64,000 nt of DNA, taken from assembly GCF_037042905.1 (NCBI RefSeq), contig NC_087245.1:31000001-31064000 (forward strand), read 5' to 3'. Origin of the DNA: Lytechinus pictus. Lineage: Eukaryota. A program made the translations under genes and the position numbers. Below, one piece after another: positions 45,201-48,200 of the stretch; positions within the stretch are counted from its first letter, which is position 1; every line of letters starts with the position of its first letter. Under the pieces are notes generated by a model. It worked only from the letters and a program-made list of their open reading frames with translations, ran no database searches and was not told where the DNA came from.

Positions 45201-48200
45201 ATCACAAAAAGAAGCAACACAGACAGGAATACTGAAAACTATATTCAAAAGAAATAAATACACATCTAGATGAAGATTCAGAAAGAACTAAATTAAAAAA
45301 GAATTTAAAAAAAACAATAATACCCACATAGTACATGTACATTCAGAAAACATTTTTTTTAATGCACCATACAATAACAACCGGTCCGTTCATTTAAAAC
45401 TGCACTTTGCAATAAAAACTACATATTGCATTGAACTTTGCACCAAGCATGAAAAAAACATACATGTACACGTTTCATCGAAGGCTACATGGATATCTTG
45501 CATTAAAAACATGTATATTTGCATCACACTTTGCATCTTGTATGAAAAGTAAAGCGAACATCAAGGGCTAAATCTAGTATAAAAAACCATGATACATTAA
45601 GACTACCCCTTACATTAAATCTACATCTTCAAAGATCATCTTAAATCTACATCTTGCATTAGAGTCCAGAACAGATACAATCAAATATATCAAGCATTAA
45701 AAAAGCACATCTCCTTATTTGTCACCACCCAGAAACTACAACTTCACTTGCGTACCCATCGCAGCATCAATACTCACAGCATGTAGACGATGAGACCAAT
45801 GCTCCACATATCTGTTGAGAAGCCGACCTGGTCGCCATTGAGAACCTCCGGTGAAGCATAGTCTGGTTCGGCGTAAGCAATCTTTACCCTTTCATCTGGA
45901 TCTAACTTGGCGGCTAGACCAAAGTCGATGATCTTGATGCTATCACCACGCTTGGTCTCATACAGTATACTTTGTGGCTGTTGTCATAAGGAAACAAGGG
46001 AAATAAAGTAGTGTGAAAATTTTAAACTGAAAAATGATAATGAAGTTGATTTTAATAGCTGTAATTCAGTATGTTTTTTAGTATGTACATTGTGTGGTGA
46101 AACAAGTTGGGGACAAAACATAATAAAAAGATGCTGGAGAAGTCTGATTGATTATACTGATTTGTTTCAATTTATGTTCTCAGATCTTGCTAGCACAAAA
46201 CAACCTAAACAAATTTGTTTAACTACGGTTAAAGTGATCATATTTTAAAAGTTGTAATAAGTTGCAATGTGTTTTCTTTATTTCCACGGACTAAAAAGCG
46301 CAAATATTATGAGCAATGTACAGTTTGTTTTCTTGCCTTATTTCCTTGTCAGAATGTGGAAATCGATTTCTGCAAGTATTACAGAAATGGGAAGTGTTCA
46401 CTTGAGTGTGTATATTCTTTACAAAATTGTACTGCAATCTAATAGAAGAGACCAAGGCCGAAGAATATATATGAGAAAATTATCCCCATGTTGTCAAAAA
46501 TTCAAAAGCAAGATATTTTTCAAAGTGAAAACTTTCTCTTATACACACTGTACACTGTAAGTAAATAAAGCCCGATTAATACCATGGATCAAAGATCTCA
46601 AGAAATGTAGAAAATGGGTGAAAGAAAGAAGTAGGCATACTCACCCTGAGAGCAAGATGCATGTGATTTTGAAGGTGAATGTGTAGTAGACCCTCGCAGA
46701 CTTGCCTTGTGTATCGAGCCACCACCTCTTCTGAGAGAGTACCTCTCTCTTTGGCTCTCTGGAATGCATCTCCACCGCTTACACTGAACAAAAGGATACA
46801 AGGTTGTTAGAACAAACATAGACTTGCTATTAAAAAAAAAAACACAGTCAATGAAAGATCACAAAAACTGTTGGTCAGTTTGCTGTCCTCCCTTTAGAAT
46901 ACAGTAGAATCTGTTAATAAAGGCCTCTCTCAAGGATAACAAGGTTAACAAGATGTGTCTTCCAAGCAAGTGGCCCTTAAGAACAAGTTTATTTAAAGAT
47001 GCAAAATCGTCTGTTTTCATGAGATTTTGACACTCTTCGGGTATAAATCAACCAGAGTAGAACATGATTAATAACAAGCAGACATCATGTCATGTAACTA
47101 GGAATTACCTTATGGTAAAGTCCTTATCTCAACTTTCCCTGGTCAGACAGTTGCAAGAGGCTGAACAGGCTTAGCAAATTACCAAATGTTTTGTTTATAT
47201 GTGATGTATTATTTCTTGTAAAATTATTGTACCTGACAGTGATATTTGGTAATAAATACAATTCAATATTTATATCTTTATTTTCCACGAGTGGGATGGA
47301 ACACTCTATCAGCAAATACTGTTTTTCGTAGGGGTCCATAAACACACAAAATAAAAAGTACAATACACAATCAAACATGGTAATGACAAAAGCACAAAAT
47401 CATATGAATCACTCACTATTTCTTTTGTTTTTTTTTGTTTGAATTAAACAATATTTCATTTTTTATAGATTTGACAATAAGGACCAACTTGACTGAATCA
47501 TATAGTATTAAACAATGCTCATTCCAAATGTTCAGCGAGGGTTTAATCGTTGTTTCACTTGACAATGAGAAGAAAAATAGGATATTCCCTATTTTATATA
47601 ATAAAATACAAAAGAAATAGTGAGTGGATGACGTCATCAGTCTCCTCATTTGCATACCCACCAGGATGTGCATATAACTGTTTTGTGAAATCAAACAAAA
47701 CTTTAAAATGTCATTACTTTCTTATCTTACATCCGATTTTGATAAAATTTTCAATGTTATGCTTGTTGGATTTTTCTCTTTTTATTCAAATCAACTTTTT
47801 GTTGGGGTGGACTTGTCCTTTAAGTTATGAATGACTTTAGGAACGACTGGTGATCCTTTCTTGGGATACTAAATCAACAAAATTCAAAATGTGGGGTATA
47901 AGCCTTAATGTGGGCCCTTTCCTCTCACTGACCTTGGAGATCTTTTGCCTTTCTTACTTTTTCCCCATTTGTGCTGTAATATAAAAAAATTAATAAAAAA
48001 TATGCCCTCAAAATATCAAAATACAACCTGCCCCTCAACAAAACCCAAATCAAACATACATGTAGGCCCCAGACGTGTGGCTGAAATCGATTTATGAGTT
48101 GCGTTATATTTTGCCAGAGCATGGACTTACAAGTCAGTGATGAGGACAAACTTGTCGTCCATGTCGAAGGCGTCGTGGCACTGCTGCAGCCTGGGGTGCT

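What the first reader, a model, noticed from the sequence alone, without database searches (positions are those of the whole stretch)
45969..46660. Twitchin/titin kinase is a pseudokinase by a route different from vertebrate titin
The spliced catalytic loop is H-L-A-L-R|P-Q-S-I. The catalytic base Asp is Ala (GCT, 46651-46653), Lys is Arg, and the Mg-binding Asn is Ser (AGT, 45969-45971). The Gly loop (GRGPFG), AAK lysine, alphaC Glu and DFG are intact, and the frame is fully conserved. Vertebrate titin kinase keeps the catalytic Asp but has EFG and MAK changes, whereas twitchins have HLDxKPEN and are active. Inference: convergent inactivation, possibly retaining ATP binding. The motif is split across an intron, so ORF scans miss it.
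Basis: partly seen in the sequence, partly recalled or inferred. Interest (0 to 1): 0.85.

Follow-up and report, generated by a model that had tools for sequence, protein, structure and literature searches.

The report
Sea urchin twitchin has dead kinase
The giant muscle protein twitchin of this sea urchin carries a well-conserved kinase domain that has lost the residues needed for catalysis, and relatives across the echinoderm phylum show related losses, so it probably works as a mechanical scaffold, not an enzyme.

Summary
On the minus strand, two exons joined by a GT..AG intron (46645|45977) encode the catalytic loop H-L-A-L-R|P-Q-S. The catalytic Asp is Ala (GCT 46653-46651), Lys is Arg, and the Mg-binding Asn is Ser (AGT 45971-45969). 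The Gly loop, AAK Lys, alphaC Glu and DFG are intact.

Assembled RNA contigs from two species carry all five kinase splice junctions and these exact codons. The window matches the NCBI Lytechinus pictus "twitchin-like" models exactly.

The same loop occurs in Lytechinus, Strongylocentrotus and Diadema, where the kinase is the most conserved stretch of the ~5000-aa protein. Other echinoderm classes have different degenerate loops:
- crinoids: HLAL[KR]PQ[NS]
- sea cucumber: HLNMKPQN
- sea stars and a brittle star: HLDLKPQS with DLG/DMG

Hemichordates and protostome twitchins are canonical. The flanking tails keep the motifs that pack them on the kinase (YD, R-7x-R).

Best reading: an ancient, selectively maintained pseudokinase that arose independently of vertebrate titin kinase and by different substitutions. 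It probably still binds nucleotide and acts as a tail-gated scaffold. Activity was not measured. I found no paper describing this. Verdict: a new variant of a known kind, of moderate-to-good interest.

The parts
51413..51706 (-). Fibronectin type III domain exon immediately upstream of the kinase region
   Evidence: tblastn of L. pictus and crinoid orthologues; ORF translation
50227..50268 (-). N-terminal linker (NL) exon segment [14 protein letters not shown], with the conserved YD motif (TAT GAC at 50238-50233)
   Evidence: peptide mapping; DYD/NYD (GYD in fish titin) present in all 18 aligned sequences; motif role from PMC12862963
49695..49779 (-). Kinase exon k0: end of the linker and start of the Gly loop (..YHIGEEIG-R)
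   Evidence: RNA joint 48330/1|49694/5
48131..48331 (-). Kinase exon k1: GRGPFG Gly loop, AAK lysine, alphaC Glu, N-lobe
   Evidence: RNA contigs X1 and X5
46645..46783 (-). Kinase exon k2: hinge to first half of the catalytic loop, ending H-L-A-L-R (Ala GCT 46653-46651; Arg AGG 46647-46645)
   Evidence: 0 differences in contig X1 and 1 synonymous difference in X5
45778..45977 (-). Kinase exon k3: P-Q-S (Ser AGT 45971-45969), DFG, activation segment with Ala-Glu in place of Gly-Thr, SPE (the APE motif)
   Evidence: RNA joint 45977|46645 in X1 and X5
44921..45058 (-). Kinase exon k4: alphaF-alphaH region, with the 5-residue deletion shared by echinoderms and hemichordates
43900..43945 (-). Kinase exon k5: end of the catalytic domain (..[15 protein letters not shown])
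40743..40817 (-). C-terminal regulatory tail (CRD) exon 1; boundaries approximate; the mapped peptide [12 protein letters not shown] lies at 40805-40770
   Evidence: helix at model residues 326-333 with block pLDDT 89 and 73
40127..40225 (-). CRD exon 2: [22 protein letters not shown].., carrying the R-7x-R motif ([10 protein letters not shown] at 40201-40172) with Leu at position -2
   Evidence: motif definition from PMC12862963
39329..39457 (-). First exon of the immunoglobulin domain that follows the CRD

Best explanation
The window holds the 3' third of the Lytechinus pictus twitchin-like gene, which encodes a ~5000-aa thick-filament-type giant of Ig and Fn3 domains.

Its single kinase domain sits in the usual Fn3 - N-terminal linker - kinase - C-terminal regulatory tail - Ig arrangement. 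It is a pseudokinase: the catalytic base Asp is Ala, the neighbouring Lys is Arg, the substrate-side Glu is Gln, the Mg-binding Asn is Ser, and the P+1 loop Gly-Thr is Ala-Glu. By established kinase enzymology, conventional phosphotransfer should be abolished or reduced by orders of magnitude (inferred, not measured).

The residues that hold nucleotide and the active-like fold are invariant: the GxGxFG loop, the AAK Lys, the alphaC Glu and the DFG Asp. So are the motifs that clamp the two flanking tails on the kinase: YD in the linker, and R-7x-R with a bulky -2 residue in the tail.

The most likely mode of action is therefore that of a tail-plugged, force-sensitive scaffold. Stretch of the filament would peel the tails off the domain and expose a conserved, possibly ATP-occupied, cleft for partner proteins. 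This is what has been proposed for vertebrate titin kinase, but here it was reached through different substitutions and independently.

The loss is old. Pro-Gln in place of Pro-Glu is shared by all five echinoderm classes. The catalytic Asp is gone in echinoids, crinoids and a holothuroid. Asn is gone in echinoids, asteroids, an ophiuroid and one crinoid. Hemichordates are canonical.
For: Shown directly:
- Codons and splice sites.
- Spliced mRNA contigs in two species with these codons.
- 8 of the 9 listed coding differences between the two species are synonymous.
- Exact match to the NCBI L. pictus models. All 30 kinase-containing annotated proteins (of 31 checked) from 9 echinoderm species carry their class-specific loop and none has HLDxKPEN.

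Family placement:
- The best solved matches by sequence are Aplysia and C. elegans twitchin kinases, then titin kinase.
- The AF2 model of the L. variegatus NL-kinase-CRD (two residue changes from the window in the 269-aa kinase) has a core pLDDT of about 90. It superposes on 3UTO and 1KOB over 346 columns at 2.2-2.3 A.
- In the ML tree, Ambulacraria scores 95/92* and echinoderms 99/98*, consistent with the species tree. These sit in a trichotomy with fish titin and protostome twitchin/projectin.

Purifying selection: among echinoids the kinase is 96.4% (rest of protein 89.0%) and 94.0% (rest 77.6%) identical. It is the top or near-top window of the whole protein. The echinoderm stem branch is 0.20, against 1.42 for fish titin.

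Motif map.

Tails: YD and R-7x-R are conserved, with Leu/Val/Met/Ile at -2. Their roles are described in PMC12862963.

Precedents:
- Titin kinase is an inactive scaffold (PMC4042850).
- Drosophila obscurin PK1 has Asp>Gly and Asn>Asp, binds ATP and is inactive (PMC10129394).
- ILK has Asn>Ser, binds ATP with one cation and is inactive (PMC4718504).
- A kinase-dead twitchin still builds normal sarcomeres in C. elegans (PMC5469603).
Against: - No enzymatic, nucleotide-binding or localisation data exist for any echinoderm twitchin. Everything about activity is inferred from residues.
- Asp-to-Ala mutants of kinases can keep trace activity, and some proteins labelled pseudokinases (CASK, WNK, Haspin-like cases) turned out to be active.
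- Strict conservation of the remodelled cleft in echinoids (Ala, Arg, Gln, Ser, Ala-Glu) would also fit a new activity rather than none.
- Sea stars and the brittle star keep the Asp, so 'the whole phylum is inactive' is not established.
- Holothuroids and ophiuroids are each represented by one species.
- The raw RNA reads sampled covered the exons with only 0-2 reads, so the transcript evidence rests on assembled contigs.
Confidence: 0.78

Rival explanations
1. The domain is still an enzyme of an unusual kind. Either phosphotransfer uses a relocated acid/base (for example the Glu that replaces the P+1 loop Thr next to the lost Asp), or the domain works without Mg like CASK, or the remodelled cleft performs a different nucleotide-dependent reaction.
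For: All nucleotide-binding residues are invariant across echinoderms. The changed cleft residues are themselves fixed in three echinoid genera from two deep lineages. The Thr-to-Glu change co-occurs with Asp-to-Ala and Lys-to-Arg only in echinoids. Authors of the obscurin PK1 study raise the same possibility for a conserved remodelled cleft (PMC10129394).
Against: Crinoids lost the Asp without gaining the Glu, and the sea cucumber has Asn and Lys at these positions, so there is no common replacement chemistry. The catalytic-loop positions differ between classes, which looks like relaxed constraint on chemistry rather than a new fixed mechanism. Simultaneous loss of Asp166, Asn171 and the Gly-Thr equivalents has no known active precedent in the CaMK group (my own knowledge).
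Confidence: 0.1
2. The degenerate loop is a local artefact or a decaying gene: an assembly or annotation error, a pseudogene copy, or an exon that is swapped out by alternative splicing in muscle.
For: The motif spans an intron. Raw-read coverage in the two raw RNA runs sampled was almost nil. The window is only part of the gene.
Against: Identical junctions and codons occur in assembled transcripts of two species. The same loop appears in independent assemblies of L. pictus, L. variegatus, S. purpuratus, Diadema antillarum and D. setosum. The frame is open through all exons. 8 of 9 between-species differences are synonymous. The domain is the most conserved in the protein. There is no alternative exon in the window or in any annotated isoform.
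Confidence: 0.02
3. The kinase is not a twitchin/titin-type domain at all. Instead it would be an obscurin/SPEG PK1-type or MLCK-type domain, where pseudokinases are already known, so nothing new is implied.
For: Arthropod obscurin PK1 domains in the same searches also lack the catalytic Asp (HGTGE/HGTGD).
Against: The tree places it with hemichordate twitchin-like proteins, inside the twitchin/projectin/titin group (100/98*). It lies apart from the echinoderm obscurin-like and MLCK kinases, which are canonical. There is a single kinase preceded by a long Ig/Fn3 super-repeat region and flanked by NL and CRD with YD and R-7x-R. The best structural matches are twitchin kinases.
Confidence: 0.02

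Closest known systems
Twitchin kinase of C. elegans and Aplysia (PDB 3UTO, 1KOA, 1KOB); projectin and TTN-1 kinases
   Same: Same clade and same Fn3-NL-kinase-CRD-Ig architecture. 40-43% identity, with the model superposing at 2.2-2.3 A over 346 columns. It shares the YD motif in NL, R-7x-R in the CRD with a bulky hydrophobic residue at -2, the canonical AAK, and DFG.
   Different: Those kinases have HLD[IL]KPEN and Gly-Thr and are active in vitro, and their catalytic residues are conserved in 47 nematodes (PMC5469603). Here the Asp, Lys, Glu, Asn, Gly and Thr equivalents are Ala, Arg, Gln, Ser, Ala and Glu.
Vertebrate titin kinase (PDB 1TKI, 4JNW, 6YGN, 9QJ2)
   Same: A pseudokinase embedded in a giant muscle filament protein, plugged by NL and CRD tails, and proposed to be a mechanosensory scaffold. 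It shares Arg at the Lys168 position (HFDIRPEN vs HLALRPQS) and keeps the YD and R-7x-R motifs.
   Different: Titin kinase keeps the catalytic Asp and the Asn. It is altered in the nucleotide and metal sites (MAK, EFG/ELG) with a small residue at CRD position -2 (PMC12862963). The urchin domain keeps AAK, DFG and a bulky -2 residue, and loses the catalytic-loop residues instead. The titin branch is very long (1.42) and the echinoderm stem is short (0.20).
PK1 of Drosophila/arthropod obscurin (Unc-89) (PDB 8AK2, 8AK3)
   Same: A sarcomeric giant-protein pseudokinase with intact GxGxxG, AAK and DFG but with the catalytic Asp and the catalytic-loop Asn replaced. The altered cleft is strictly conserved within a large clade. 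It binds ATP and has no detectable phosphotransfer (PMC10129394).
   Different: It is a different paralogue (the obscurin family, with two kinases per protein). The substitutions differ (Asp>Gly, Asn>Asp). It has a minimal tail without the mechanosensory plug, whereas the urchin domain keeps the full NL and CRD.
Integrin-linked kinase (ILK) pseudokinase
   Same: Asn171 is replaced by Ser as here. The DFG Asp is retained and binds the single cation. It binds ATP at micromolar affinity as a structural cofactor and is catalytically inactive (PMC4718504). From my own knowledge, ILK also has Ala at the catalytic Asp position.
   Different: It is an unrelated kinase group (TKL) with a degenerate Gly loop, DVK instead of DFG, no flanking autoinhibitory tails, and a cytoskeletal adaptor role at focal adhesions.

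Membership tests
Twitchin/titin-like sarcomeric kinase (NL-kinase-CRD module of a giant Ig/Fn3 protein) | Single CaMK-like kinase flanked by Fn3 upstream and Ig downstream, near the C-terminus of a multi-thousand-residue Ig/Fn3 protein | tested here: met
   Exons are collinear with 4715-4988-aa twitchin-like orthologues. Pfam finds Pkinase at 200 bits, followed by I-set domains.
Twitchin/titin-like sarcomeric kinase (NL-kinase-CRD module of a giant Ig/Fn3 protein) | YD motif in the N-terminal linker | tested here: met
   RDYDQC at 50238-50227 region. DYD/NYD (GYD in fish titin) is present in all 18 aligned sequences, echinoderm orthologues included.
Twitchin/titin-like sarcomeric kinase (NL-kinase-CRD module of a giant Ig/Fn3 protein) | R-7x-R motif in CRD helix R2, with the -2 residue matched to the AxK motif | tested here: met
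   [12 protein letters not shown] at 40201-40172, with Leu at -2 and AAK in strand beta3. This is the combination reported for active twitchin-type kinases, not the titin type (PMC12862963).
Twitchin/titin-like sarcomeric kinase (NL-kinase-CRD module of a giant Ig/Fn3 protein) | Phylogenetic placement with twitchin/projectin/titin kinases rather than obscurin, MLCK or DAPK | tested here: met
   ML tree: the clade of 30 rows has 100/98* support, and the ambulacrarian clade lies inside it. The top PDB hits are twitchin, then titin.
Catalytically active twitchin kinase | Catalytic loop HLD[IL]KPEN with Asp base and Asn, plus Gly-Thr in the P+1 loop | tested here: not met
   HLALRPQS and Ala-Glu
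Pseudokinase (Manning definition: lacks the VAIK Lys, the HRD Asp or the DFG Asp) | At least one of the three residues missing in an otherwise intact kinase fold | tested here: met
   The HRD-position Asp is Ala. The Lys and the DFG Asp are present. The fold is predicted with a core pLDDT of about 90. Definition as quoted in PMC4718504.
Pseudokinase (Manning definition: lacks the VAIK Lys, the HRD Asp or the DFG Asp) | No phosphotransfer activity | not testable with these tools
   Needs a kinase assay on recombinant protein.
Titin-kinase-type pseudokinase | Bulky residue in the theta-x-K motif (MAK), EFG/ELG instead of DFG, and a small residue at CRD position -2 | tested here: not met
   The window has AAK, DFG and Leu at -2. 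Fish titin in the same alignment has MAK, ELG and Gly (G-A-R-V) at -2.
Obscurin PK1-type pseudokinase | First of two tandem kinases, Asp>Gly and Asn>Asp/Glu, minimal tail | tested here: not met
   Single kinase, Ala and Ser, full NL and CRD. It is separate from the obscurin-like rows in the tree.

The most novel reading that the evidence does not exclude
The echinoid twitchin 'kinase' is not simply dead. It has been re-tooled: a strictly conserved cleft (Ala/Arg/Gln/Ser plus a new Glu in the P+1 loop), with a fully intact nucleotide pocket and an intact force-releasable plug. It would use bound ATP as a mechanically gated conformational switch, or carry out a non-canonical reaction. That would make echinoderms a natural system in which the mechanosensing and catalytic roles of a sarcomeric kinase are uncoupled.
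Probability: 0.12. Interest if true: 0.8.

Novelty: new variant of a known kind. Interest (0 to 1): 0.55.

Why it matters
The field treats invertebrate twitchin, projectin and TTN-1 kinases as active enzymes, and treats the pseudokinase state as a hallmark of vertebrate titin (PMC12862963, PMC5469603).

Here a whole deuterostome phylum carries a twitchin-clade kinase whose catalytic loop has decayed, in at least two and probably three independent steps at the catalytic Asp. Meanwhile the fold, the nucleotide pocket and both force-sensitive tails stay under strong selection.

That is a natural experiment on a long-standing question: is the conserved job of these domains catalysis, or mechanically gated scaffolding? 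It also offers graded comparison material:
- hemichordate: canonical
- sea star: Asp kept, Asn lost
- sea cucumber: Asn at the Asp position
- urchin and crinoid: Ala at the Asp position

Automatic names such as 'non-specific serine/threonine protein kinase' for the sea urchin protein are probably wrong.

Tried and rejected
- **Alternative or mutually exclusive exons.** I ran tblastn of exons k1-k3 against the whole window at E<=50, plus a six-frame scan for HxDxK, KPEN and DxKP. Only chance hits appeared, such as HHDLKHP at 50377, upstream and out of order. None of the 31 annotated proteins checked (30 with the kinase) has a canonical loop.
- **Raw RNA reads (X22, X23).** Only 0-2 reads fell on the exons at the sampled depth. 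They give no codon evidence beyond two reads across joint 45058|45778.
- **DNA of the S. purpuratus-like contig behind P0001, for a codon-level comparison.** I used the between-species differences listed by read laying instead.
- **Parsimony counts.** I used treekit's own count of changes: Asp 2, Lys 3, Glu 1 and Asn 3 changes on the quick gene tree. In the careful gene tree the order of crinoids, Asterozoa and Echinozoa is unresolved. On the accepted species tree (crinoids sister to the rest) the Asp site needs 3 changes, counted by hand.
- **A second homologue search seeded with the sea cucumber protein.** It found no further holothuroids.
- **Obscurin/MLCK identity.** Rejected by the tree and the architecture.
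- **Chordate invertebrates.** I ran no further search on amphioxus or tunicate titin kinases, because hemichordates already show that the two inactivations are independent.
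Full report
**1. What is in the sequence**

The feature lies on the minus strand. Exon k2 (46783-46645) ends CAT CTT GCT CTC AGG, followed by GTGAGT. Exon k3 (45977-45778) starts after a CAG acceptor with CCA CAA AGT ATA.

Together with exons 49779-49695, 48331-48131, 45058-44921 and 43945-43900, the frame stays open over a complete 269-residue kinase domain. The Gly loop (GRGPFG), the beta3 lysine (FAAKF), the alphaC Glu and DFG are present.

In phmmer alignments to solved structures, the Ala lines up with the catalytic Asp of C. 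elegans and Aplysia twitchin (nhmHLAL against nyvHLDL). PQS lines up with PEN.

**2. Is it real and expressed?**

Laying public runs on 43850-49800 showed one long assembled RNA contig in each of two organisms: X1 (7040 nt) and X5 (5625 nt). Each crosses all five introns at precisely the predicted sites, with CT..AC on the plus strand, which is GT..AG for the gene.

No other letter was read at the three key codons. The contig of the second organism differs from the window at nine listed coding positions. Eight are synonymous and one is Glu to Asp.

The two raw-read RNA runs had almost no coverage of this gene, so they add only two junction reads.

The 269-aa translation is an exact substring of all six NCBI Lytechinus pictus twitchin-like isoforms. 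So the window is that gene. Its last ~1650 codons lie between about 63600 and 21000.

No second copy of exon k2 or k3, and no HLDxK/KPEN-encoding stretch in a usable position, exists in the 64 kb. None of the 31 annotated echinoderm proteins examined offers a canonical loop.

**3. What family it belongs to**

By sequence, the closest solved proteins are Aplysia and C. elegans twitchin kinases, then titin kinase, MLCK4 and obscurin PK1.

I predicted a structure for the L. variegatus NL-kinase-CRD segment, which differs from the window at two residues of the 269-aa kinase domain. The kinase core has a pLDDT of about 90, and the tail helices 73-89. Its best structural matches are 3UTO and 1KOB, with 346 aligned columns at rmsd 2.2-2.3 A, followed by medaka and human titin kinase.

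A maximum-likelihood tree of kinase domains gave these results:
- The window groups with Lytechinus, Strongylocentrotus and Diadema (100/99*).
- That group joins the sea cucumber (98/97*).
- All echinoderms form one clade (99/98*), and hemichordate twitchin-like proteins are their sister (95/92*).
- This ambulacrarian clade forms an unresolved trichotomy with fish titin kinase and protostome twitchin/projectin.
- The whole group (100/98*) excludes the echinoderm obscurin-like and MLCK-like kinases, which have canonical motifs.

The gene tree is consistent with the species tree, although the order of crinoids, Asterozoa and Echinozoa is unresolved. So these are one-to-one orthologues.

The linker upstream carries the YD motif (RDYDQC, 50238-50227). 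The tail downstream carries R-7x-R ([12 protein letters not shown], 40201-40172) with Leu at position -2. A 2026 study identifies these motifs as the anchors of the two autoinhibitory, force-sensitive tails in titin and twitchin kinases. It notes that a bulky -2 residue goes with a canonical AxK motif (PMC12862963).

**4. How widespread the change is**

Homologue searches recovered orthologues from all five echinoderm classes and from three hemichordates. The motif map is:

| Group | Species | Catalytic loop | DFG | P+1 loop |
|---|---|---|---|---|
| Echinoids | L. pictus, L. variegatus, S. purpuratus, Diadema antillarum, D. setosum | HLALRPQS | DFG | Ala-Glu |
| Holothuroid | Apostichopus (two independent annotations) | HLNMKPQN | DFG | Ala-Lys |
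| Asteroids | Patiria, Acanthaster, Asterias rubens, A. amurensis | HLDLKPQS | DLG | Gly-Ser |
| Ophiuroid | Amphiura | HLDLKPQS | DMG | Arg-Ser |
| Crinoid | Anneissia | HLALKPQN | DFG | Gly-Ser |
| Crinoid | Antedon | HLALRPQS | DYG | Gly-Ser |
| Hemichordates | three species | YLDLKPEN | DFG or DLG | Gly-Ser |
| Protostome twitchin, projectin, TTN-1 | many | HLD[ILM]KPEN | DFG | Gly/Ala-Thr (almost uniformly) |
| Fish titin kinase | Dallia (P0200), P0003 | HFDIRPEN | ELG | Thr-Thr/Ala (with MAK) |

Glu-to-Gln is thus a single change on the echinoderm stem. The catalytic Asp, the Lys and the Asn changed repeatedly afterwards.

treekit counts 2 changes for the Asp on the quick gene tree. In the careful gene tree, the order of crinoids, Asterozoa and Echinozoa is unresolved. 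On the accepted species tree the Asp site needs 3 changes. Asp to Ala and Asp to Asn are each one nucleotide step, while Ala to Asn needs two. This favours independent losses from an Asp-bearing ancestor (inference).

**5. Is the domain still under selection?**

Yes. Between Lytechinus and Strongylocentrotus the kinase is 96.4% identical, against 89.0% for the rest of the protein. Between Lytechinus and Diadema the figures are 94.0% and 77.6%. In both comparisons essentially no other window of the same length in the ~5000-residue protein is as conserved.

The echinoderm stem branch is of ordinary length (0.20), unlike the very long titin branch (1.42). The Gly loop, the beta3 Lys, the alphaC Glu and the DFG Asp are invariant in all echinoderms.

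So constraint was lost only at the chemistry-performing residues. It was kept on the fold, the nucleotide pocket and the tail contacts.

**6. Mechanism proposed**

Established kinase enzymology makes the HRD-position Asp the catalytic base and the catalytic-loop Asn a ligand of the second metal. Neither is required for ATP binding (PMC4718504).

Three precedents fit:
- ILK has Ser at the Asn position, binds ATP with one cation through its DFG Asp, and is inactive.
- Drosophila obscurin PK1 has Gly and Asp at the two positions, binds ATP without metal, and is inactive, with the altered cleft conserved across arthropods (PMC10129394).
- Titin kinase is regarded as an inactive scaffold that recruits partners when its tail is displaced (PMC4042850). 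A kinase-dead twitchin still assembles normal sarcomeres in C. elegans (PMC5469603).

By analogy, I propose that the sea urchin domain is a nucleotide-binding, catalytically silent module whose NL and CRD plugs are released by force to expose a binding surface.

The steps that are shown: the residue changes, expression and splicing, orthology, conservation, and tail motifs. The steps that are inferred: loss of activity, ATP binding, and scaffold or mechanosensor function.

One detail is worth testing. In twitchin and medaka titin kinase, the second Arg of R-7x-R salt-bridges the catalytic Asp. Here the Arg is kept although the Asp is Ala, and a new Glu sits at the neighbouring P+1 position.

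**7. Comparison with what is known, and novelty**

The domain is a member of the twitchin/titin kinase family by architecture, tails, structure and phylogeny. It fails the defining feature of an active twitchin kinase.

It is not a titin-type pseudokinase, because it has AAK, DFG and a bulky -2 residue. It is not an obscurin PK1-type either.

The protein sequences are already public as automatic gene models. The S. purpuratus orthologue is even named 'non-specific serine/threonine protein kinase' in UniRef.

Full-text searches found no paper that notes a degenerate catalytic loop in echinoderm twitchin:
- The 2026 titin kinase study does not mention echinoderms.
- A 2025 connectin evolution paper uses the S. 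purpuratus kinase only as a tree tip (PMC12198301).
- The 2006 sea urchin kinome paper is not in the searchable library, so I could not check whether it flags this kinase.

I rate the finding a new variant of a known kind, namely a sarcomeric giant-protein pseudokinase. It is of interest mainly to muscle-kinase and pseudokinase specialists.

Noticed in passing
window 47233-48028 and 48427-49620: Two intron stretches between kinase exons collect enormous depth from RNA reads and contigs on both strands. They show many variants, loose ends and strand-switch joints. They look like copies of abundant, transcribed repeats or transposons, not part of the gene.
   Followed up: no
window 16163-16359 (N run) and 16946-17782: Downstream of the gene's last exon there is an assembly gap, then a degenerate C/A-rich tandem array (units of 23-71 nt, e.g. 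CACCTTCATCACCACACCTACCA). This explains the GC skew of about -0.5 to -0.6 at 16-20 kb. The gap was left untouched.
   Followed up: partly
window about 42864-42847: A small exon encoding ..EKDIFDFGE.. lies between the end of the kinase and the regulatory tail. It is present in the Lytechinus models but absent from the S. purpuratus and Diadema models. It may be a lineage-specific or alternative mini-exon in the linker to the autoinhibitory tail.
   Followed up: no
kinase exon k4, window 45058-44921: Echinoderm and hemichordate orthologues share a 5-residue deletion in the alphaF-alphaG region ([12 protein letters not shown] against PFAGENDIETLKNVKAC). They also share GGD[AVIP]F in place of GGELF at the hinge. 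These are ambulacrarian signatures that predate the catalytic-loop decay.
   Followed up: no
proteins P0013, P0152, P0153 (Logan contigs); P0270, P0271, P0273, P0278; P0268; P0281: Other twitchin-clade kinases with non-canonical catalytic residues turned up. A rotifer-like fragment has HLNIKPEN. Trematode twitchins have Asn>Asp (and DFS in Schistosoma). A pseudoscorpion unc-22 model has Asn>Met and DFS. A Seison protein has a degenerate loop. Loss of catalysis in twitchin may have happened in further lineages.
   Followed up: partly
protein P0289 (XP_041485182.1): L. variegatus has a second annotated 4978-aa 'twitchin-like' protein on the same 96.7-Mb record as isoforms X1-X4, with the same HLALRPQS loop. 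It may be a tandem duplicate or a retained haplotype.
   Followed up: no
proteins P0299 and P0301 (WP_411024610.1, WP_262409828.1): Two 'fibronectin type III domain-containing protein, partial [Salmonella sp.]' records on 430-441-bp contigs fall in the 90%-identity cluster of sea cucumber twitchin. They are almost certainly animal DNA contaminating bacterial assemblies.
   Followed up: no
window 27455-27625: An exon encoding an acidic stretch followed by an IQ-like motif (..[19 protein letters not shown]..) lies in the C-terminal region after the kinase. It was not examined here.
   Followed up: no
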